Shown piece by piece: positions 1 to 64,000 of a stretch of DNA of 64,000 bases. Numbering within the stretch: the first letter of the stretch is position 1; each line of letters starts with the position of its first letter. The notes below the pieces were generated by a model, which searched no databases, was not told the origin of the DNA, and worked only from the letters and a program-made list of their open reading frames with translations. The DNA is taken from assembly GCA_964057225.1 (NCBI GenBank), contig OZ059894.1, positions 11,966,001 to 12,030,000 on the forward strand, in the 5' to 3' direction. Origin of the DNA: Auanema rhodensis (taxonomy: Eukaryota > Animalia > Nematoda). The translations under genes and the position numbers were made by a program.

Positions 1-288
1 AAAACTACAATATTAAACTATAAAAGTAACAAAAGCGTAGAGGCAGCAAAGACATGAATAAACATAAATGTAAATACAGAATTACCAGGTAGTACATAAG
101 TATGACAAAAAATTATAAGAAAGCCATGAAAATAGAAGGTTTGTGAACAAATGAGAGGTACATCTTTGATCGTATAGTCATTTCTAAACCGTTCGTATGC
201 TGCAGCATCGTCATAAGCGTCACTCAAGTTGAATTTCCATGTGTACTACACGATTTTCATTCTTATTGTTACATTCTTTCCCTGAGGG

Positions 289-1303
289 AATGGGCCGTTC
301 CCGCCAGCAGTGCAAGAGCGGGTCGACCCGTGAGGTGGAGCTAGCAAGCCAGCATCTACCTCAAGTCTCAAAAATCGGTTAACCTTATTGTGAACCAATG
401 GAACACATATCGAAGGTTAATTCGATAAGAACGATTTATTGAAGTAGATAATGTTTGTCCCGGAGGACTACAATATTAAAATAATTACTGAAGCCCGAAG
501 GCAGCGAGAAATAGTAAGGATACTACCTGCACTGAGTGCGTCGTATCATAAAAAAAGAGATAGCTAATGGGCAAGTTGAAGAGCTTGAAATTAACAATGA
601 CGTCACTAGAAGTAAAGTTTTCTATCTGCAGCTGCGGGTAAAGAGGGTCAGCGTAAGCAGAATTCAATTCTACCAACAATTAGTGGGAACATTGAGAGAA
701 CAGATGAAGGAGGAAATTGTAACTTCAAGTAAAATAGATTATATCTTCAGCTGCGGGTAAAGAGAGTCAGCTTTGTACAGATTACTAGTTTACATAAGAA
801 GTGGTAACATTTCAAAAAAGGAGCACAACATAAAAAACGAGACTACGGACTATGAGGTAAATGTTATCATTGTCTGGATCGATGATTCGGCATTTGATTG
901 CAGCTGCGGATTGAGTGGATCAGCTTGCATGGCGTCCGCATTCGACATCAGGGAAAATGATGAGTTTCTTGAGGTCCGGCTCGGCGGGCTGTTATGTCCT
1001 ATTCCCTGTTGATGGTGTTGTTGTCCTTGAGCTTGTTCTTCTTCCCAGAAAAAAAAAAACTGTGAAGCTGAAGAGTCCTATTAAACGTCTTTAAACGCAA
1101 GATTAATAAGAAGCTACTACAGCTAACACAGGACCGCCTCAAGGCCTGGTAGATCAACCAGTGTTGCTTCAATCACCAAGTATTGCGGCCTGGGCCCTTG
1201 GATCAATTCACAACACCAGTATAGCAATGGAACACATATCGAAGGTTAATTCGATAAGAACGATTACTACACTTTGATCTTAGCCAAAAGGCCGAGAAGC
1301 GAT
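289..1303 (-). pseudogene. U2: U2 snRNA gene interrupted by element A (nt 1-79 at 1303-1225; nt 40-end at 435-289)
   Basis: Minus strand ATCGCTTCTCGGCCTTTTGGCTAAGATCAAAGTGTAGTA from 1303; 3' part with Sm site ATTTTTG and loop IV TTGCACT lies beyond the insert. Confidence 0.93.
436..1224 (-). mobile_element. Element A: 789-bp non-coding U2-targeted insertion, putative non-autonomous Utopia-dependent retroelement
   Basis: Absent from post-gap units; flanked by 40-bp direct repeats of U2 nt 40-79 (396-435, 1225-1264); 3' end CATTATCTACTTCAATAA resembles the Utopia tail; no long ORF. Confidence 0.85.
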
Positions 1304-3235: not shown

Positions 3236-3330
3236 ACCAGTATAGTAATAGAACACATATTGAAGATTAATTCGATAAGAACAATTTATTGACGTAGAGA
3301 ATGTTTGTTCCGAAAAACTACAATATTAAA
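3236..3330 (-). mobile_element. Fossil junction: element 3' end + U2 nt 39-79 + element 5' end; present in the spacer of every unit
   Basis: 3236-3245 matches element A 5' terminus; 3246-3286 matches U2 39-79 (36/41); 3287-3330 matches element A 437-480 (38/44). Confidence 0.85.
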
Positions 3331-3601: not shown

Positions 3602-4616
3602 AATGGGCCGTTCCCGCCAGCAGTGCAAGAGCGGGTCGACCCGTGAGGTGGAGCTAGCAAGCCAGCATCTACCTCAAGTCTCAAAAATCGGTTAACCTTA
3701 TTGTGAACCAATGGAACACATATCGAAGGTTAATTCGATAAGAACGATTTATTGAAGTAGATAATGTTTGTCCCGGAGGACTACAATATTAAAATAATTA
3801 CTGAAGCCCGAAGGCAGCGAGAAATAGTAAGGATACTACCTGCACTGAGTGCGTCGTATCATAAAAAAAGAGATAGCTAATGGGCAAGTTGAAGAGCTTG
3901 AAATTAACAATGACGTCACTAGAAGTAAAGTTTTCTATCTGCAGCTGCGGGTAAAGAGGGTCAGCGTAAGCAGAATTCAATTCTACCAACAATTAGTGGG
4001 AACATTGAGAGAACAGATGAAGGAGGAAATTGTAACTTCAAGTAAAATAGATTATATCTTCAGCTGCGGGTAAAGAGAGTCAGCTTTGTACAGATTACTA
4101 GTTTACATAAGAAGTGGTAACATTTCAAAAAAGGAGCACAACATAAAAAACGAGACTACGGACTATGAGGTAAATGTTATCATTGTCTGGATCGATGATT
4201 CGGCATTTGATTGCAGCTGCGGATTGAGTGGATCAGCTTGCATGGCGTCCGCATTCGACATCAGGGAAAATGATGAGTTTCTTGAGGTCCGGCTCGGCGG
4301 GCTGTTATGTCCTATTCCCTGTTGATGGTGTTGTTGTCCTTGAGCTTGTTCTTCTTCCCAGAAAAAAAAAAACTGTGAAGCTGAAGAGTCCTATTAAACG
4401 TCTTTAAACGCAAGATTAATAAGAAGCTACTACAGCTAACACAGGACCGCCTCAAGGCCTGGTAGATCAACCAGTGTTGCTTCAATCACCAAGTATTGCG
4501 GCCTGGGCCCTTGGATCAATTCACAACACCAGTATAGCAATGGAACACATATCGAAGGTTAATTCGATAAGAACGATTACTACACTTTGATCTTAGCCAA
4601 AAGGCCGAGAAGCGAT
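3602..4616 (-). pseudogene. U2: U2 snRNA gene interrupted by element A
   Basis: Same as 289-1303. Confidence 0.93.
3749..4537 (-). mobile_element. Element A copy 2
   Basis: Same sequence and junctions as 436-1224. Confidence 0.85.
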
Positions 4617-6914: not shown

Positions 6915-7929
6915 AATGGGCCGTTCCCGCCAGCAGTGCAAGAGCGGGTCGACCCGTGAGGTGGAGCTAGCAAGCCAGCATCTACCTCAAGTCTCAAAAA
7001 TCGGTTAACCTTATTGTGAACCAATGGAACACATATCGAAGGTTAATTCGATAAGAACGATTTATTGAAGTAGATAATGTTTGTCCCGGAGGACTACAAT
7101 ATTAAAATAATTACTGAAGCCCGAAGGCAGCGAGAAATAGTAAGGATACTACCTGCACTGAGTGCGTCGTATCATAAAAAAAGAGATAGCTAATGGGCAA
7201 GTTGAAGAGCTTGAAATTAACAATGACGTCACTAGAAGTAAAGTTTTCTATCTGCAGCTGCGGGTAAAGAGGGTCAGCGTAAGCAGAATTCAATTCTACC
7301 AACAATTAGTGGGAACATTGAGAGAACAGATGAAGGAGGAAATTGTAACTTCAAGTAAAATAGATTATATCTTCAGCTGCGGGTAAAGAGAGTCAGCTTT
7401 GTACAGATTACTAGTTTACATAAGAAGTGGTAACATTTCAAAAAAGGAGCACAACATAAAAAACGAGACTACGGACTATGAGGTAAATGTTATCATTGTC
7501 TGGATCGATGATTCGGCATTTGATTGCAGCTGCGGATTGAGTGGATCAGCTTGCATGGCGTCCGCATTCGACATCAGGGAAAATGATGAGTTTCTTGAGG
7601 TCCGGCTCGGCGGGCTGTTATGTCCTATTCCCTGTTGATGGTGTTGTTGTCCTTGAGCTTGTTCTTCTTCCCAGAAAAAAAAAAACTGTGAAGCTGAAGA
7701 GTCCTATTAAACGTCTTTAAACGCAAGATTAATAAGAAGCTACTACAGCTAACACAGGACCGCCTCAAGGCCTGGTAGATCAACCAGTGTTGCTTCAATC
7801 ACCAAGTATTGCGGCCTGGGCCCTTGGATCAATTCACAACACCAGTATAGCAATGGAACACATATCGAAGGTTAATTCGATAAGAACGATTACTACACTT
7901 TGATCTTAGCCAAAAGGCCGAGAAGCGAT
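6915..7929 (-). pseudogene. U2: U2 snRNA gene interrupted by element A
   Basis: Same as 289-1303. Confidence 0.93.
7062..7850 (-). mobile_element. Element A copy 3
   Basis: Same sequence and junctions as 436-1224. Confidence 0.85.
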
Positions 7930-9861: not shown

Positions 9862-10876
9862 AATGGGCCGTTCCCGCCAGCAGTGCAAGAGCGGGTCGAC
9901 CCGTGAGGTGGAGCTAGCAAGCCAGCATCTACCTCAAGTCTCAAAAATCGGTTAACCTTATTGTGAACCAATGGAACACATATCGAAGGTTAATTCGATA
10001 AGAACGATTTATTGAAGTAGATAATGTTTGTCCCGGAGGACTACAATATTAAAATAATTACTGAAGCCCGAAGGCAGCGAGAAATAGTAAGGATACTACC
10101 TGCACTGAGTGCGTCGTATCATAAAAAAAGAGATAGCTAATGGGCAAGTTGAAGAGCTTGAAATTAACAATGACGTCACTAGAAGTAAAGTTTTCTATCT
10201 GCAGCTGCGGGTAAAGAGGGTCAGCGTAAGCAGAATTCAATTCTACCAACAATTAGTGGGAACATTGAGAGAACAGATGAAGGAGGAAATTGTAACTTCA
10301 AGTAAAATAGATTATATCTTCAGCTGCGGGTAAAGAGAGTCAGCTTTGTACAGATTACTAGTTTACATAAGAAGTGGTAACATTTCAAAAAAGGAGCACA
10401 ACATAAAAAACGAGACTACGGACTATGAGGTAAATGTTATCATTGTCTGGATCGATGATTCGGCATTTGATTGCAGCTGCGGATTGAGTGGATCAGCTTG
10501 CATGGCGTCCGCATTCGACATCAGGGAAAATGATGAGTTTCTTGAGGTCCGGCTCGGCGGGCTGTTATGTCCTATTCCCTGTTGATGGTGTTGTTGTCCT
10601 TGAGCTTGTTCTTCTTCCCAGAAAAAAAAAAACTGTGAAGCTGAAGAGTCCTATTAAACGTCTTTAAACGCAAGATTAATAAGAAGCTACTACAGCTAAC
10701 ACAGGACCGCCTCAAGGCCTGGTAGATCAACCAGTGTTGCTTCAATCACCAAGTATTGCGGCCTGGGCCCTTGGATCAATTCACAACACCAGTATAGCAA
10801 TGGAACACATATCGAAGGTTAATTCGATAAGAACGATTACTACACTTTGATCTTAGCCAAAAGGCCGAGAAGCGAT
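9862..10876 (-). pseudogene. U2: U2 snRNA gene interrupted by element A
   Basis: Same as 289-1303. Confidence 0.93.
10009..10797 (-). mobile_element. Element A copy 4
   Basis: Same sequence and junctions as 436-1224. Confidence 0.85.
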
Positions 10877-13168: not shown

Positions 13169-14183
13169 AATGGGCCGTTCCCGCCAGCAGTGCAAGAGCG
13201 GGTCGACCCGTGAGGTGGAGCTAGCAAGCCAGCATCTACCTCAAGTCTCAAAAATCGGTTAACCTTATTGTGAACCAATGGAACACATATCGAAGGTTAA
13301 TTCGATAAGAACGATTTATTGAAGTAGATAATGTTTGTCCCGGAGGACTACAATATTAAAATAATTACTGAAGCCCGAAGGCAGCGAGAAATAGTAAGGA
13401 TACTACCTGCACTGAGTGCGTCGTATCATAAAAAAAGAGATAGCTAATGGGCAAGTTGAAGAGCTTGAAATTAACAATGACGTCACTAGAAGTAAAGTTT
13501 TCTATCTGCAGCTGCGGGTAAAGAGGGTCAGCGTAAGCAGAATTCAATTCTACCAACAATTAGTGGGAACATTGAGAGAACAGATGAAGGAGGAAATTGT
13601 AACTTCAAGTAAAATAGATTATATCTTCAGCTGCGGGTAAAGAGAGTCAGCTTTGTACAGATTACTAGTTTACATAAGAAGTGGTAACATTTCAAAAAAG
13701 GAGCACAACATAAAAAACGAGACTACGGACTATGAGGTAAATGTTATCATTGTCTGGATCGATGATTCGGCATTTGATTGCAGCTGCGGATTGAGTGGAT
13801 CAGCTTGCATGGCGTCCGCATTCGACATCAGGGAAAATGATGAGTTTCTTGAGGTCCGGCTCGGCGGGCTGTTATGTCCTATTCCCTGTTGATGGTGTTG
13901 TTGTCCTTGAGCTTGTTCTTCTTCCCAGAAAAAAAAAAACTGTGAAGCTGAAGAGTCCTATTAAACGTCTTTAAACGCAAGATTAATAAGAAGCTACTAC
14001 AGCTAACACAGGACCGCCTCAAGGCCTGGTAGATCAACCAGTGTTGCTTCAATCACCAAGTATTGCGGCCTGGGCCCTTGGATCAATTCACAACACCAGT
14101 ATAGCAATGGAACACATATCGAAGGTTAATTCGATAAGAACGATTACTACACTTTGATCTTAGCCAAAAGGCCGAGAAGCGAT
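13169..14183 (-). pseudogene. U2: U2 snRNA gene interrupted by element A
   Basis: Same as 289-1303. Confidence 0.93.
13316..14104 (-). mobile_element. Element A copy 5
   Basis: Same sequence and junctions as 436-1224. Confidence 0.85.
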
Positions 14184-15010: not shown

Positions 15011-15210
15011 NNNNNNNNNNNNNNNNNNNNNNNNNNNNNNNNNNNNNNNNNNNNNNNNNNNNNNNNNNNNNNNNNNNNNNNNNNNNNNNNNNNNNNNNNN
15101 NNNNNNNNNNNNNNNNNNNNNNNNNNNNNNNNNNNNNNNNNNNNNNNNNNNNNNNNNNNNNNNNNNNNNNNNNNNNNNNNNNNNNNNNNNNNNNNNNNNN
15201 NNNNNNNNNN
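15011..15210. other. Assembly gap (200 N)
   Basis: Run of N. Confidence 1.
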
Positions 15211-16066
15211 TAGGAAATGTTTTGCCCCGTAGGACTACAAGTAAATATTATCTAGCACAAGGCTATTAGAGAATGATAAGATACTACCTGCACTAAGTGC
15301 GTCGCATCGTAAAGGGAAAAAAATTAAACAATGGGAGTTTAACAGCATGAAATTGAGAGAAAAGACATATCCGAGTGTGAATAAAATTACGGGTGAACGG
15401 AACATGGAGTACGAGAGACATACAAAACGAGACTAAGTGAAAAGAAAAAGTCTTGTATCACGTTCATGAAGGTTCGACGGATCCGGTAAGAAGCTGCGGG
15501 TTCAGAAGGTCAGCTTTCATCTCGTAGTCGTGGCGCATCAGGAATTTGTGAAGCTTTCCGGCTTTGCAGACGGCTGTATTGGTCCTCGTAGGATGGTGGA
15601 AGATGTTGTCGCTTAGTGATGTTACACATAAAGATATGCAAAAATAGAACAATTCAAAGAAAAAGAGCACAATTAAAACGAGATTTGGAGAGAAGAGAAG
15701 TCTTATATCACTTTCGATGGTTCGGAAGCTCCAGTCTGCTGCTGCGGTTTAGGGGGTGCAACTGGCATGTCGGAGGCGTAGCACATCATAGGTCAAGCTT
15801 GCTGGACTCCCGGCTCGGCTGGTGGCTGTGAGTTTTCCTTGTGCTTGTTCTCGGTGGTGGTCCCTGGGCTGTCTCTTCACCAAAAATTACTATACTAATT
15901 GCACATTTCATTTAAACGACCCATTTCAGAAGCTTTAAGAGGAAAAGCTACAATTAGCATAGGACCGCCTCAAGGCCTGGTGGATCATTCAATTTAGTTT
16001 CAATCGCCAAGTATAGCGGCCTGGGCCCTTGGGTCAATTCACTGAACCAGTGTAGTATCGATTGTT
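15211..16066 (-). mobile_element. Element B: diverged relative of element A inserted in U2; extreme 3' end lost in the gap
   Basis: Follows U2 nt 79 like element A; shares 5' module (15961-16055 vs 1130-1224) and 3' hairpins (15217-15312 vs 451-550); interior diverged. Confidence 0.85.
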
Positions 16067-16145
16067 CAATGGAACACATATCGAAGGTTAATTCGATAAG
16101 AACGATTACTACACTTTGATCTTAGCCAAAAGGCCGAGAAGCGAT
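16067..16145 (-). pseudogene. U2: U2 snRNA 5' fragment (nt 1-79) upstream of element B
   Basis: Identical to U2 nt 1-79. Confidence 0.92.
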
Positions 16146-17252: not shown

Positions 17253-18432
17253 ACAGTAAAAAGTCCAATCAAGAGAGAAATTTTTTCAACACATAGTTGT
17301 TTTTTTTTTAAATATCATTGTTTTTCCTCATAACTCGGTTTAAACTCGTTCTAACCCGTTGAAATACGTCTAGAAAGTCTTTATAACATGCATATGTATG
17401 ATAGAACTTCATATTTATTGTAATAGAAAATTTTATTTTCAGACGTCTTGGTTAACAATGATATGTTTTACCCCCTTATAATTTTTATCATAATGTTCCT
17501 TATACGGAACGCTCAATGAAACTTGCTTCCAGAAAAATTTCTTTCTATTTTTTCTTCATATGTACGTAGATACTATAGAGAACTATGATAGAAAACTTTA
17601 ACATTCACGAAATCATCATTTCTCATTACGCTACGGAGGTTTAAAAAGCTGTGTTTTACCTTATAATAGACCGGAAAACCCTTGTGTTAAAACTGGACCG
17701 TTTTTACACATATAAAAATGTCCCGTATTCGGGACCCTAATGTAACTTTTGATTCCCTATATTTTTTTTCATGAAATTTACAATCTACTGTAGAAAGAAG
17801 AATTATTTTTATAAAAACTGTAAATTTTTGAAAAATGAAAACAAAACGAAAACAAAAACAACTTTTTTTTGAACATTTTCTCACACAAGGGTCCCCCCTT
17901 ACCTACTTTTTTTCTCATTACTCGTTTCAACCTCATCCGATCACTCTGCAAACATGTTTAATCGTTCTAACTTGTTGAAATACGTCTTAAAAGTCTAAAC
18001 AACATGCATATGCATAATAGAAACCACCCGAATAGGCCCCCACGCACTAAACGAGATATATACATTACCAGTATAGTAATAGAACACATATTGAAGATTA
18101 ATTCGATAAGAACAATTTATTGACGTAGAGAATGTTTGTTCCGAAAAACTACAATATTAAACTATAAAAGTAACAAAAGCGTAGAGGCAGCAAAGACATG
18201 AATAAACATAAATGTAAATACAGAATTACCAGGTAGTACATAAGTATGACAAAAAATTATAAGAAAGCCATGAAAATAGAAGGTTTGTGAACAAATGAGA
18301 GGTACATCTTTGATCGTATAGTCATTTCTAAACCGTTCGTATGCTGCAGCATCGTCATAAGCGTCACTCAAGTTGAATTTCCATGTGTACTACACGATTT
18401 TCATTCTTATTGTTACATTCTTTCCCTGAGGG

Positions 18433-29296: not shown

Positions 29297-29414
29297 AGCT
29301 TACGACACCCGGGATTCCCAAGCCGTCTCCGATCCAAGTACTAACCGGGCCCAACGTTGCTTGACTTGCCAGATCGGACGGGATGGCGTACTTTCAACGT
29401 GGTATGGTGTAAGC
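29297..29414 (-). rRNA. 5S: 5S rRNA variant with 1-nt deletion (G7)
   Basis: ggtatggtgtaagc instead of ggtatggtcgtaagc. Confidence 0.9.
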
Positions 29415-39205: not shown

Positions 39206-39342
39206 AGCTTACGACACCCGGGATTCCCAAGCCGTCTCCGATCCAAGTACTAACCGGGCCCAACGTTGCTTGACTTGCCAGATCGGACGGGATGGCGTAC
39301 TTTCAAGGGATGGCGTACTTTCAACGTGGTATGGTCGTAAGC
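39206..39342 (-). pseudogene. 5S: 5S rRNA with internal 18-bp tandem duplication
   Basis: gggatggcgtactttcaa repeated at 39289-39306 and 39307-39324. Confidence 0.85.
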
Positions 39343-61862: not shown

Positions 61863-63042
61863 ACAGTAAAAAGTCCAATCAAGAGAGAAATTTTTTCAAC
61901 ACATAGTTGTTTTTTTTTTAAATATCATTGTTTTTCCTCATAACTCGGTTTAAACTCGTTCTAACCCGTTGAAATACGTCTAGAAAGTCTTTATAACATG
62001 CATATGTATGATAGAACTTCATATTTATTGTAATAGAAAATTTTATTTTCAGACGTCTTGGTTAACAATGATATGTTTTACCCCCTTATAATTTTTATCA
62101 TAATGTTCCTTATACGGAACGCTCAATGAAACTTGCTTCCAGAAAAATTTCTTTCTATTTTTTCTTCATATGTACGTAGATACTATAGAGAACTATGATA
62201 GAAAACTTTAACATTCACGAAATCATCATTTCTCATTACGCTACGGAGGTTTAAAAAGCTGTGTTTTACCTTATAATAGACCGGAAAACCCTTGTGTTAA
62301 AACTGGACCGTTTTTACACATATAAAAATGTCCCGTATTCGGGACCCTAATGTAACTTTTGATTCCCTATATTTTTTTTCATGAAATTTACAATCTACTG
62401 TAGAAAGAAGAATTATTTTTATAAAAACTGTAAATTTTTGAAAAATGAAAACAAAACGAAAACAAAAACAACTTTTTTTTGAACATTTTCTCACACAAGG
62501 GTCCCCCCTTACCTACTTTTTTTCTCATTACTCGTTTCAACCTCATCCGATCACTCTGCAAACATGTTTAATCGTTCTAACTTGTTGAAATACGTCTTAA
62601 AAGTCTAAACAACATGCATATGCATAATAGAAACCACCCGAATAGGCCCCCACGCACTAAACGAGATATATACATTACCAGTATAGTAATAGAACACATA
62701 TTGAAGATTAATTCGATAAGAACAATTTATTGACGTAGAGAATGTTTGTTCCGAAAAACTACAATATTAAACTATAAAAGTAACAAAAGCGTAGAGGCAG
62801 CAAAGACATGAATAAACATAAATGTAAATACAGAATTACCAGGTAGTACATAAGTATGACAAAAAATTATAAGAAAGCCATGAAAATAGAAGGTTTGTGA
62901 ACAAATGAGAGGTACATCTTTGATCGTATAGTCATTTCTAAACCGTTCGTATGCTGCAGCATCGTCATAAGCGTCACTCAAGTTGAATTTCCATGTGTAC
63001 TACACGATTTTCATTCTTATTGTTACATTCTTTCCCTGAGGG

Positions 63043-63189
63043 AATGGGCCGTTCCCGCCAGCAGTGCAAGAGCGGGTCGACCCGTGAGGTGGAGCTAGCA
63101 AGCCAGCATCTACCTCAAGTCTCAAAAATCGGTTAACCTTATTGTGAACCAATGGAACACATATCGAAGGTTAATTCGATAAGAACGAT
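63043..63189 (-). pseudogene. U2: U2 snRNA 3' part (nt 40-end), interrupted by Utopia-like retrotransposon
   Basis: U2 identity stops at 63189 (nt 40). Confidence 0.93.
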
Positions 63190-64000
63190 GGTTTATTGAA
63201 TAAATAATGTTATGATACAATAAATAACCAATAAAAAAGAGCCCAGAATCGGGGAGACGGTATTACCAGTACAACTTAAAACAGCAAGTGATTAAAAAGT
63301 ACAAAATAAAACACATTACCAACAGAGGCTAAAACGACTCAAGAGTCGGGGGAGTGGGTTAAAAAAAGTAATGAATAACAAAAAAATGAATAATAAAGCA
63401 GAACAGTGAAAAGTAAATATCAAGTGCCGCTATGATCAAACAATTTGAGTGCCTACGGCAATGGTGTTAAAAATAAACAACAAAATACATGTACCAATGA
63501 AGGTCAGAAGGAAAGAGAAAAAAAAAAAAAAAAAAAAAAAGACCAAAATAAGTAATACAAAAAGTAAACACATTACAATCGAATCACAAACAAGTCAATG
63601 GATAATTTCTTCTTCATACTGCCTTACACCAGAAACATGTTCCACGTAGATATTCCTGGCCCACTTGATGGTATCGGCGACGATGAGCTTCTCCATTAGC
63701 CGGTTGTAGTGGCTGCTGATCTTGAGTGATCGGAGGGCTTGTCCGTTGAGCGGGTCCATAGTTCCAAGCGTTCCTACGACATACGCTTCTACACTAGTCT
63801 TATAACCAAGACATTGGTATTGGCTGGCTATGTCAGCATATTTCCTCTCCTTTATCATACGCGCGGCTATCATGGCTTGTCGGCGGTTTTCATAGCTCAC
63901 TGTAACATCAACGATACTACAGTGTTTTGCGTCATGATCGACCACTACTATGTCAGGTCGGAGTGTACTATTAATGCCAGGAAGTGGCTGGTTAGTGTAA
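63190..64000 (-). mobile_element. 3' end of a Utopia-like (NeSL clade, R2 superfamily) U2-targeting non-LTR retrotransposon: RLE domain + 405-bp 3' UTR
   Basis: Same orientation as U2, joined just after GTAGTA; ends ...TTCAATAAACC; ORF with RLE motifs; continues beyond window. Confidence 0.92.
63595..63999 (-). CDS. C-terminal restriction-like endonuclease domain of non-LTR retrotransposon ORF (5'-partial)
   Basis: Frame is open to the window edge: YTNQPLPGINSTLRPDIVVVD..IVDVTVSYEN..K.RKY..VVGTLG..DTIKWARNIYVEHVSGVRQY; PD-D-(E)xK/KY RLE motifs and a Utopia-type C-terminus. Confidence 0.92.
   Translation of the reverse strand, partial: YTNQPLPGINSTLRPDIVVVDHDAKHCSIVDVTVSYENRRQAMIAARMIKERKYADIASQYQCLGYKTSVEAYVVGTLGTMDPLNGQALRSLKISSHYNRLMEKLIVADTIKWARNIYVEHVSGVRQYEEEIIH

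What the first reader, a model, noticed from the sequence alone, without database searches (positions are those of the whole stretch)
436..1224. Non-autonomous U2-specific retroelement family sharing its target site with a Utopia retrotransposon in a 5S/U2 array
Seen: a 789-bp non-coding insert splits U2 in five units. Its 3' junction (U2 nt 39/40, +/-1 because of A ambiguity) matches that of the RLE-encoding element at 63190. It has the same orientation and a similar tail (minus strand AACATTATCTACTTCAATAA vs AACATTATTTA-TTCAATAAACC). Known: Utopia elements target U2 just 3' of GTAGTA, and R2 elements mobilise short non-autonomous SIDEs. Inference: this is a SINE/SIDE-like parasite of Utopia with no recognisable tRNA/5S/7SL head, likely transcribed from the host U2 promoter. 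I do not know of a description of such a family but cannot search. Caveat: similarity to this Utopia copy covers only ~20 terminal nt, so the true partner could be another Utopia family.
Basis: partly seen in the sequence, partly recalled or inferred. Interest (0 to 1): 0.85.

Follow-up and report, generated by a model that had tools for sequence, protein, structure and literature searches.

The report
Non-coding rider at Utopia's U2 site
A 789-base sequence with no protein-coding capacity sits inside U2 snRNA genes of this roundworm at the exact base used by the U2-specific retrotransposon Utopia. It is most likely a passenger copied by Utopia's enzyme, a partner type I found no report of, but actual jumping and its RNA were not seen here.

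Summary
Five consecutive units of a U2/5S array carry the same 789-bp insert, 100% identical. It has U2's orientation, and U2 resumes at nt 40 after it, exactly as after the Utopia-type element at 63190. U2 runs to nt 79 in front of it, giving a 40-41-bp duplication.

It has no ORF over 79 aa, no remnant of a Utopia protein, no tRNA, 5S, 7SL or ribozyme match, no inverted ends and no intron boundaries.

The five copies are best counted as one event spread by array dynamics. Two other lineages exist in the window:
- a diverged copy (15211-16066) with the same nt-79 upstream junction;
- a decayed head-to-tail junction in all 24 units whose spacer lies in the window.

The link to Utopia rests on site, orientation and an 18/20-nt tail match (shuffle p 2e-4). 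A 12-mer of that tail recurs in an Auanema Utopia.

The resident Utopia's 5' end lies outside the window and could not be fetched.

Verdict: a probable SIDE-like non-autonomous partner of Utopia, a new variant of a known kind.

This scan reported the same family on other DNA of this genome (s1-378755, s1-378769, s1-409927, s1-407095, s1-391272).

The parts
436..1224 (-). Rider A, copy 1 (789 bp; 788 if the ambiguous A is given to U2).
   Evidence: Sequence read. It is 100% identical to four other copies. ORFs are no longer than 79 aa. No Rfam or tRNA hit.
3749..4537 (-). Rider A, copy 2.
   Evidence: 789/789 identical.
7062..7850 (-). Rider A, copy 3.
   Evidence: 789/789 identical.
10009..10797 (-). 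Rider A, copy 4.
   Evidence: 789/789 identical.
13316..14104 (-). Rider A, copy 5.
   Evidence: 789/789 identical.
1225..1303 (-). U2 nt 1-79 in front of rider A copy 1, the putative U2 head of the element RNA. Nt 40-79 (1225-1264) is the upstream copy of the duplication.
   Evidence: Exact pattern matches to intact U2. Direct repeat D2. The 600 nt upstream are identical to those of intact genes.
285..435 (-). U2 nt 40-190 behind rider A copy 1. Nt 40-79 (396-435) is the downstream copy of the duplication.
1110..1224 (-). Conserved 5' block of the rider (element nt 1-115). It holds two tracts complementary to U2 nt 1-45.
   Evidence: 83% identical to rider B over 108 nt. Duplex with U2 nt 1-45 is -36 kcal/mol against -24.6 +/- 3.7 for shuffles, p 0.004.
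436..552 (-). Conserved 3' block. It holds a small GCAC/GUGC hairpin, a GGTAGTATC motif, a 4-bp hairpin with a UNCG loop and the terminal motif AACATTATCTACTTCAATAA.
   Evidence: 77% identical to rider B over about 105 nt and 73% to the fossil over 94 nt. Hairpins read. Tail match to Utopia.
620..924 (-). Three internal copies of a 33-nt motif (620-652, 739-771, 892-924; sense-strand core GCTGAC...CCGCAGCTG). Function unknown. The motif is partly kept in rider B.
   Evidence: the repeat finder family D1. Alignment with rider B.
1049..1059 (-). Run of 11 T on the sense strand, a Pol III terminator-like tract that argues against Pol III transcription through the element.
   Evidence: Read. Reading it as a terminator is inference from known Pol III biology.
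15211..16066 (-). Rider B, a diverged family member. It follows U2 nt 79 with 11 extra nt. Its 3' end is lost in the assembly gap at 15011-15210.
   Evidence: U2 nt 1-79 lies at 16067-16145.
18063..18210 (-). Fossil head-to-tail junction (one example). It reads rider 3' end (18117-18210), then a degenerate U2 nt 40-78 (18078-18116), then the rider 5' end (18063-18077).
   Evidence: Read. BLAST finds the tail piece in all 24 array units whose spacer lies in the window. A nt 703-789 matches at 73%, E 1.5e-11. The U2 piece scores 68 against a null maximum of 43.
63190..64000 (-). 3' part of the autonomous Utopia-type element. ORF tail 63598-63999, stop codon 63595-63597, 3' UTR 63190-63594. The element runs off the window.
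63039..63189 (-). U2 nt 40-190 directly behind the Utopia 3' end.

Best explanation
The 789-bp insert, called the rider here, belongs to a non-autonomous, U2-site-specific retroelement family. It encodes nothing and is propagated by the reverse transcriptase and restriction-like endonuclease of a Utopia-type retrotransposon living in the same U2 genes.

Shown:
- It lies in U2's orientation with its 3' end at U2 nt 39/40, the published Utopia site just 3' of GTAGTA.
- U2 runs to nt 79 in front of it.
- Three lineages (A, B and the fossil) share these junctions.
- Its last 20 nt resemble the resident Utopia's tail.

Inferred:
1. The intact U2 promoter of a disrupted gene makes a Pol II transcript that starts at U2 +1 and runs through the rider.
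2. Utopia protein made elsewhere binds the rider's conserved 3' block (small hairpins plus the AACATTAT..TCAATAA motif). It nicks the bottom strand of an intact U2 gene at 39/40 and primes reverse transcription there. Downstream U2 sequence on the co-transcript may help set the exact start, as is known for R2.
3. The 5' join has two possible routes.
   - The cDNA of the U2 head (nt 1-79) pairs with the U2 DNA upstream of the nick. In that case the 40-nt repeat is inherited with the element.
   - The top strand is cut 40 bp downstream, which makes a true target-site duplication.
4. Once in the array, copies are spread, lost or doubled by unequal crossing-over and gene conversion. The five identical adjacent copies reflect this.
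5. A head that stops before the Sm site would keep the RNA out of snRNP assembly. The anti-U2 tracts in the 5' block would fold back on the head.
For: - Exact shared 3' junction and orientation with the RLE-encoding element. The site matches the published Utopia site, where U2 resumes right after GTAGTA (PMC4640811).
- No coding capacity: longest ORF 79 aa, no blastx hit to 268 Utopia-type proteins, and the longest ORF has no homologue.
- No inverted ends and no intron boundaries.
- Tail match of 18/20 to the resident Utopia, shuffle p 2e-4.
- The 12-mer CAAACATTATCT recurs near the 3' end of a Utopia-type element inserted at the same U2 base in Auanema sp. JU1783, p 0.008.
- Rider B is only about 80% alike at its ends, with little similarity in the middle, yet keeps the nt-79 junction. 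The fossil junction keeps it within 1 nt.
- End-biased conservation, with the 5' block at 83%, the 3' block at 77% and a weak middle, is what a template recognised at its ends should show.
- A hairpin with a UNCG loop is kept through stem changes in A, B and the fossil.
- The 600 nt upstream of inserted and intact genes are identical, so the promoter is intact.
- The 5' block is complementary to U2 nt 1-45 well beyond shuffles and beyond the rest of the element.
- Fifteen runs from four studies hold the rider. Four small runs guessed to be RNA hold 39-77% of its words.
- Unchecked earlier notes of this scan report a 47-copy family found only at this site.
Against: - No insertion event is demonstrated. 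The five copies are identical and adjacent, and all array units are near-identical, so array dynamics alone explain them.
- No 5'-truncated copy and no copy outside the array could be looked for, because no genome is held.
- Similarity to this Utopia copy stops at about 20 nt. BLAST finds nothing else in its last 811 nt. This is short for a stringent LINE/SINE pair.
- The Utopia 5' leader could not be compared.
The RNA label of four runs is only a guess.
- The compensatory change in the fossil hairpin is made of C>T and G>A transitions. All four substitutions within nt 40-78 of the fossil's U2 piece are of those types as well, so the compensatory change may be chance.
Confidence: 0.68

Rival explanations
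1. The rider is a relic, not a living family. One or very few ancient insertions into U2 have persisted and diversified only through array dynamics: unequal crossing-over, gene conversion and recombination between the 40-bp repeats. There is no ongoing retrotransposition. A and B would be paralogues that diverged in place, while their U2 flanks were kept uniform by concerted evolution.
For: - The five A copies are identical and in adjacent units.
- The 600 nt upstream of all 24 U2 5' halves in the window are identical apart from one base in two units, so homogenisation is strong.
- The 40-41-bp direct repeats allow tandem doubling, which would produce the fossil's head-to-tail form. They also allow precise loss without any new insertion.
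- No truncated or off-site copy is seen in the window.
Against: - A and B keep their ends (83% and 77%) while the middle has diverged with many indels. That fits selection on a template's ends better than neutral decay in place.
- The tail motif is shared with Utopia elements of two genera.
- The anti-U2 complementarity is maintained in both lineages.
- Unchecked notes report several length variants and 47 copies spread over about 1 Mb of array.
Confidence: 0.17
2. The rider is a mobile non-autonomous retroelement, but its driver is not the Utopia copy in this window. The driver would be another resident Utopia family, or an unrelated U2-specific element of the Keno type (APE endonuclease, Tx1 clade), which uses the same U2 base.
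For: - Only about 20 nt are shared with this Utopia copy.
- The rider tail matches the Auanema Utopia motif about as well.
- Keno and Utopia have identical 3' flanking U2 sequence (PMC4640811).
- An unchecked note describes a different rider that ends in the last 179 nt of the resident Utopia. The present family may therefore belong to another partner (s1-391272).
Against: - No Keno-type or second autonomous element is visible in the window.
- Keno has been reported from vertebrates, lancelet and cnidarians, not from nematodes.
- The tail match to the resident Utopia is the best found.
Confidence: 0.12
3. The insert is not a retroelement at all. It would be a DNA transposon of the snRNA-gene-targeting Dada type, a spliceosomal intron acquired by the U2 gene, or an assembly artefact.
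For: - Dada transposons do target snRNA genes (PMC8869645).
- From my own knowledge, mRNA-type introns are known in some fungal U2 and U6 genes.
- An assembly gap lies next to rider B.
Against: - There are no terminal inverted repeats, and the duplication is 40-41 bp rather than a few bp.
- None of the 42 ways of removing 829 nt that restore U2 has GT-AG or AT-AC ends.
- Fifteen independent runs from four studies hold the sequence.
Confidence: 0.03

Closest known systems
R2 SIDEs and R2/R1 hybrid SIDEs of Drosophila (Eickbush & Eickbush 2012, PMC3414825)
   Same: - Short and non-coding.
- Inserted at the exact site and in the orientation of a site-specific non-LTR retrotransposon inside a tandemly repeated RNA gene.
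- Thought to be co-transcribed with the host gene and copied in trans by TPRT.
   Different: - SIDEs are recognisable internal deletions that keep the partner's 5' ribozyme and its 3' UTR.
- Here only about 20 terminal nt match the visible partner, and no ribozyme is detected.
- The host is a Pol II snRNA gene, not rDNA.
- The element is preceded by 79 nt of host RNA with a 40-nt repeat.
Utopia, U2 snRNA gene-specific RLE non-LTR retrotransposons (Kojima & Jurka 2015, PMC4640811)
   Same: - Same insertion base just 3' of GTAGTA, and same orientation.
- Similar terminal motif.
- Tandem insertions are also reported for Utopia-1_NVit.
- Utopia is known from nematodes (Trichinella, Pristionchus).
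   Different: - The rider has no ORF.
- The paper never uses the term 'non-autonomous'.
- Published 5' junctions give no duplication in arthropods and 20 bp in reptiles, against 40-41 bp here.
SINEU, crocodilian SINEs with U1- or U2-derived heads (Kojima 2015, PMC4494074)
   Same: - Non-autonomous retroelements whose 5' part is snRNA sequence.
- No internal Pol III promoter.
- Oligo-T tracts inside.
- Transcription proposed to depend on flanking sequence.
   Different: - SINEU copies are dispersed, with a preference for a Mariner element. They are linked to Tx1-type partners and carry the snRNA piece as part of each copy.
- The rider is seen only inside U2 genes, and its U2 head is continuous with the host gene.
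R9 of bdelloid rotifers, an RLE element with a very long target-site duplication (from my own knowledge, not checked here)
   Same: It shows that RLE-type site-specific elements can produce long duplications by widely staggered cuts. A true 40-bp TSD is therefore possible.
   Different: R9 is autonomous and targets 28S rDNA.
Keno, an APE-type Tx1-clade element specific for the same U2 base
   Same: Identical 3' flanking U2 sequence.
   Different: - Different endonuclease type.
- Not reported in nematodes.
- None seen in the window.

Membership tests
Non-autonomous partner of a site-specific non-LTR retrotransposon (SIDE-like) | No protein-coding capacity of its own. | tested here: met
   The longest ORF is 79 aa, and that only with a TTG start. 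No blastx hit at E < 2 to 268 Utopia-type proteins. The longest ORF has no homologue in the protein collection.
Non-autonomous partner of a site-specific non-LTR retrotransposon (SIDE-like) | Same insertion site and orientation as the autonomous partner. | tested here: met
   Both the rider and the element at 63190 are followed by U2 nt 40 onward, on the same strand.
Non-autonomous partner of a site-specific non-LTR retrotransposon (SIDE-like) | 3' end shared with the partner, as the RT recognition region. | tested here: inconclusive
   Only the last 20 nt match: 18/20, shuffle p 2e-4. BLAST finds nothing more. A 12-mer is also shared with an Auanema Utopia, p 0.008.
Non-autonomous partner of a site-specific non-LTR retrotransposon (SIDE-like) | 5' end shared with the partner, that is, an internal-deletion origin. 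| not testable with these tools
   The partner's 5' end lies beyond the window. No genome is held, and no near-identical protein or contig could be fetched.
Non-autonomous partner of a site-specific non-LTR retrotransposon (SIDE-like) | 5' self-cleaving (HDV-like) ribozyme, as in R2 SIDEs. | tested here: not met
   An Rfam scan of 240-1360 up to E = 10 lists no ribozyme family. A ribozyme of an undescribed type is not excluded.
Non-autonomous partner of a site-specific non-LTR retrotransposon (SIDE-like) | Several independent insertions, seen as junction variation, truncations or polymorphism. | tested here: inconclusive
   The five A copies are identical and adjacent, so they count as one event. 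Rider B and the fossils are separate lineages at the same site. No truncated copy is seen.
SINE in the strict sense | Head derived from tRNA, 5S or 7SL with an internal Pol III promoter. | tested here: not met
   No tRNA. No 5S or 7SL match inside the insert. A T11 run lies inside the element.
Utopia (the autonomous element at 63190-64000) | C-terminal restriction-like (PD..D/ExK) endonuclease. | tested here: met
   The ORF tail has the RPD..D..E..K pattern. The only PDB matches are weak (E 0.07-0.7) and fall on the C-terminal region of R2 proteins. It is 51-63% identical to the C-termini of proteins with an RT domain.
Utopia (the autonomous element at 63190-64000) | 3' junction in U2 immediately after GTAGTA. 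| tested here: met
   Junction read. Published site.
Utopia (the autonomous element at 63190-64000) | RT domain, and placement in the Utopia clade of an RT tree. | not testable with these tools
   The RT part lies outside the window. Relatives carry RVT_1 and come from hosts listed for Utopia, namely Ladona fulva and turtles.
Dada-type DNA transposon | Terminal inverted repeats and a short TSD. | tested here: not met
   No TIR; the duplication is 40-41 bp.
Spliceosomal intron in an snRNA gene | GT-AG or AT-AC boundaries whose removal restores the gene. | tested here: not met
   None of the 42 restoring deletions has such ends.

The most novel reading that the evidence does not exclude
The rider and its Utopia partner are U2-headed retroelements.
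- Their RNA starts at the host U2 +1 under the U2 promoter.
- It carries the first 79 nt of U2 (rider) as a leader that stops short of the Sm site. According to unchecked notes, the Utopia leader is about 96 nt.
- The leader folds back on anti-U2 tracts in the element's own 5' block.
- It is copied back into DNA, so the 40-nt repeat is inherited rather than made by staggered cuts, and each insertion rebuilds a landing site.

The rider would then be the first non-autonomous parasite described for an snRNA-gene-specific retrotransposon.
Probability: 0.35. Interest if true: 0.7.

Novelty: new variant of a known kind. Interest (0 to 1): 0.58.

Why it matters
Site-specific retrotransposons with restriction-like endonucleases (R2 and its relatives) are the best-understood models of target-primed reverse transcription and are being developed as gene-insertion tools. 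The only non-autonomous partners I know of for them are the Drosophila SIDEs.

A short RNA that a U2-specific enzyme accepts as template would define the minimal cis signals of Utopia: a 3' block of about 100 nt with a 20-nt terminal motif, and a 5' block tied to the U2 head.

It would also show how a Pol II snRNA promoter can be borrowed to express a retroelement. And it would give a natural system for asking whether long 'target duplications' are made at integration or inherited with the RNA.

For the host, 7 of the 25 U2 genes in this window are disrupted, so the pair also bears on how snRNA gene arrays tolerate and purge such insertions.

Tried and rejected
1. The genome search 'own': no genome is held for this window, so no genome-wide census was possible.
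   - In-window tools (repeat finder, local scripts) did read them.
   - An Rfam scan of the fetched Auanema locus turned out to cover that species' own U2 head.
3. Metagenome scan with a pattern from the two invariant stretches of the 5' block: one hit, a GC-rich bacterial contig. This is a chance match.
4. Fetching the resident full-length Utopia:
   - The representative search, a search with the nearest full-length relative and a search with the 134-aa tail gave nothing closer than 63%.
   - The contigs of the nearest ENA hits hold no DNA.
   - The Diploscapter-like contigs do not reach U2.
5. Fetching rider-bearing contigs through the rider's longest ORF: the ORF is not in the protein collection.
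6. Ribozyme or other known RNA family in the rider: none up to E = 10.
7. HDV-like double pseudoknot drawn by eye in the 5' block: the pairing segments are invariant between A and B, so there is no covariation to test. The layout lacks a P4/J4-2 region. I dropped it.
8. Conserved small peptide (ADPL.PQLQ-like) in the internal repeats: A and B share only about 11 of 27 residues. I dropped it.
9. An older U2 5' half in the spacer upstream of the fossil: alignment score 28 against a null maximum of 37, not significant.
10. Intron and DNA-transposon readings: rejected.
11. Thermodynamic stability of the 5' and 3' blocks on their own: not different from shuffles, z -0.5, +0.4 and -1.4.
Full report
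**What the window is.** The window is a tandem array of U2 snRNA and 5S rRNA genes, all on the - strand. It holds 25 U2 genes. Eighteen are intact. Five are split by one and the same insert, one is split by a diverged relative of it, and one, at the right edge, is split by a protein-coding element that runs off the window.

The 600 nt upstream of all 24 U2 5' halves in the window are identical, apart from one base in two units. The array is therefore strongly homogenised.

**The observation.** BLASTN of 436-1224 against the window gives five 789/789 identical copies at 436, 3749, 7062, 10009 and 13316. On the sense (-) strand the order is U2 nt 1-79, insert, U2 nt 40-190.
- The insert has U2's orientation.
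- Its 3' end abuts U2 nt 40.
- It is flanked by a direct repeat of U2 nt 40-79. The repeat reads as 41 nt if the ambiguous A is counted.

The coding element at the right edge ends at 63190 and is followed by the same U2 nt 40 onward. This is the published Utopia site, where U2 resumes directly after GTAGTA (PMC4640811). This worm's U2 has one extra base upstream, hence 39/40 rather than 38/39.

The last 20 nt of the insert and of the coding element agree at 18 positions with one gap. Only 0.02% of 20,000 shuffles reach that score.

**The coding element is Utopia-like.**
- Its 134-aa ORF tail carries the RPD...D...E...K pattern.
- Its only PDB matches are weak and fall on the C-terminal endonuclease region of R2 proteins.
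- It is 51-63% identical to the C-termini of 900-1200-aa proteins with an RVT_1 domain.
- Those relatives come from nematodes (Auanema, Diploscapter, Plectus) and from hosts listed for Utopia, such as Ladona fulva and turtles.
- Two relatives could be read in context. Both sit at the same U2 base. One is a Logan contig, ending ...AAAAATAA followed by ATCGTTC. The other is an Auanema sp. JU1783 contig, with its junction at L006 10895/10896.

**What the insert is not.**
- It has no ORF above 79 aa.
- It has no blastx trace of Utopia-type proteins.
- Its longest ORF has no homologue in the protein collection.
- It has no tRNA and no Rfam family up to E = 10, ribozymes included.
- It has no terminal inverted repeats.
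- None of the 42 ways of removing 829 nt that restore U2 has intron-like ends.
- A run of 11 T on the sense strand argues against Pol III transcription.

**How many events.** The five copies are identical, lie in five consecutive units, and have flanks identical to those of empty units. I count them as one insertion spread by unequal crossing-over or gene conversion, not as five jumps. The window does hold two further lineages.

1. Rider B (15211-16066) follows U2 nt 79 with 11 extra nt. It is 83% identical to A over the first 108 nt and 77% over about 105 nt near the 3' end. It aligns only weakly, with many indels, in between. Its 3' end is lost in an assembly gap.
2. In all 24 units whose spacer lies in the window there is a fossil about 270 nt downstream of U2. 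It reads 94 nt of rider 3' end (73% to A, E 1.5e-11), then a degenerate U2 nt 40-78, then 15 nt of rider 5' end.

The fossil is a head-to-tail junction. It could arise by re-insertion into the rebuilt site, as reported for Utopia-1_NVit. It could equally arise by recombination between the 40-bp repeats.

The family is thus older than the present array unit. Its ends are better kept than its middle.

**Anatomy that bears on mechanism.**

*The 3' block.* It keeps a GCAC/GUGC hairpin, the motif GGTAGTATC, and a 4-bp hairpin with a UNCG loop:
- A has GUCC-UCCG-GGAC.
- B has GUCC-UACG-GGGC.
- The fossil has GUUU-UUCG-GAAC.

The terminal motif follows. The stem change in the fossil is compensatory, but it consists of C>T and G>A transitions. 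All four substitutions within nt 40-78 of the fossil's U2 piece are of those types as well, so this is weak evidence. The 12-mer CAAACATTATCT of the rider tail recurs near the 3' end of the Auanema Utopia (p 0.008). There it directly follows a UUCG-looped mini-hairpin that I read by eye in the sequence; RNAfold did not predict it.

*The 5' block.* It contains two tracts resembling the reverse complement of U2 nt 1-45 (alignment p 0.003 for A and 0.008 for B).
- The predicted duplex with U2 nt 1-45 is -36 kcal/mol for A and -35 for B.
- Shuffles give -24.6 +/- 3.7 for A (-22.4 +/- 3.5 for B), and the rest of rider A gives -13 to -21 (rider B up to -28).
- In the minimum-energy fold of head plus block, the U2 5' end and the GUAGUA region are both paired with the block.

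*The internal repeats.* Three 33-nt repeats have no assigned role.

**Most likely mechanism.** I read the insert as a non-autonomous retroelement copied in trans by a Utopia-type enzyme (confidence 0.68).

The site, orientation, lineages, end-biased conservation and tail motif are shown. The following steps are inferred:
1. The intact U2 promoter drives transcription through the rider.
2. Utopia protein recognises the 3' block.
3. The protein nicks U2 at 39/40 and primes reverse transcription there.
4. A 5' join produces the 40-nt repeat.

That repeat can be a true target-site duplication from a staggered top-strand cut. Long ones are known for RLE elements such as R9, from my own knowledge. 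Or it can be inherited, because the RNA starts at U2 +1 and its cDNA pairs with U2 upstream of the nick. R2 RNAs that carry 28S sequence behave this way (PMC3774820 abstract).

Three points favour inheritance:
- the same nt-79 endpoint in A and B, and within 1 nt in the fossil;
- different U2 endpoints in related autonomous elements, about nt 58 in L004, at least nt 88 before a gap in Auanema, and 0 or 20 bp in published families;
- the cis-complementary 5' block.

Unchecked notes of this scan put the resident Utopia's endpoint at nt 96. I could not verify that.

Stopping before the Sm site would keep such an RNA out of snRNP assembly. That is inference from snRNA biogenesis.

**Rivals.**
- A relic spread only by array dynamics (0.17). 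This fits the identical adjacent copies but not the end-biased conservation or the shared Utopia motif.
- A different driver, either another Utopia family or a Keno-type element (0.12). This is open, because only about 20 nt link the rider to this copy.
- DNA transposon, intron or artefact (0.03). These are rejected.

**Outside evidence.** Fifteen public runs from four studies and four organism labels hold the rider. Four small runs guessed to be RNA hold 39-77% of its words. That is suggestive of expression at best.

I worked beside those places afterwards, as described under Tried and rejected.

**Novelty.** The Utopia paper never uses the term 'non-autonomous'. Full-text searches found no U2-specific non-autonomous element.

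The closest known things are:
- the Drosophila R2 and R2/R1 SIDEs;
- the crocodilian U1- and U2-headed SINEU families, which are dispersed and linked to Tx1-type partners.

I class the rider as a new variant of a known kind.

This scan has already reported the same family on other DNA of this genome: s1-378755, s1-378769, s1-409927, s1-407095 and s1-391272. Those notes are unchecked. They did not enter my confidence except as leads.

Noticed in passing
window 18063-18210 and the matching place in all 24 array units whose spacer lies in the window (e.g. 3286-3330, 62727-62771 for the tail piece): Fossil head-to-tail junction: rider 3' end, then a degenerate U2 nt 40-78, then the rider 5' end. 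It is fixed in the spacer about 270 nt downstream of each U2 gene. All four substitutions within nt 40-78 of its U2 piece are C>T or G>A.
   Followed up: yes
window 1110-1224 and 15935-16066: The rider's 5' block holds two tracts resembling the reverse complement of U2 nt 1-45, including the GUAGUA region. The predicted duplex is far stronger than for shuffles or, in rider A, for the rest of the element (the contrast is weaker in B). Its function is unknown.
   Followed up: partly
window 436-441 with 433-435; 63192-63197; L004 near 4199: AATAAA lies at or across the 3' junction of the rider, of the resident Utopia and of a related Utopia. It might act as a polyadenylation signal placing the RNA 3' end inside the downstream U2 sequence.
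   Followed up: no
L006 6250-6337 and 10535-10895 (Auanema sp. JU1783, GCA_943334845.2): A Utopia-type element lies at the same U2 base in another rhabditid genus. U2 nt 1-88 lies upstream of it before an N gap. Its 3' end holds the rider's 12-mer CAAACATTATCT, which follows a UUCG mini-hairpin.
   Followed up: partly
L005 1-40 and L004 1-60 (Logan contigs of two runs): A related Utopia (51% in the endonuclease domain) shows a tandem junction: element 3' end, then a U2 piece of about nt 40-58, then the element 5' end. Its leader has a motif (TCGAGGGAA) repeated three times.
   Followed up: no
window 15011-15210: A 200-N assembly gap removes rider B's 3' end, the rest of that U2 gene and about 1.1 kb of spacer.
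   Followed up: no
window 39206-39342 and 29297-29414: Two variant 5S genes. One has an 18-nt internal tandem duplication and the other a 1-nt deletion. Some units hold one 5S gene instead of two, e.g. the unit between 6911 and 9858.
   Followed up: partly
window 1265-1270 with 1261-1264, all U2 copies; L004; L006: U2 in this worm, in Auanema and in the L004 organism reads GTAGTAATCG at the insertion site. The canonical form, as I recall it from other animals, is GTAGTATCTG. Another reader of this scan also noted this.
   Followed up: no
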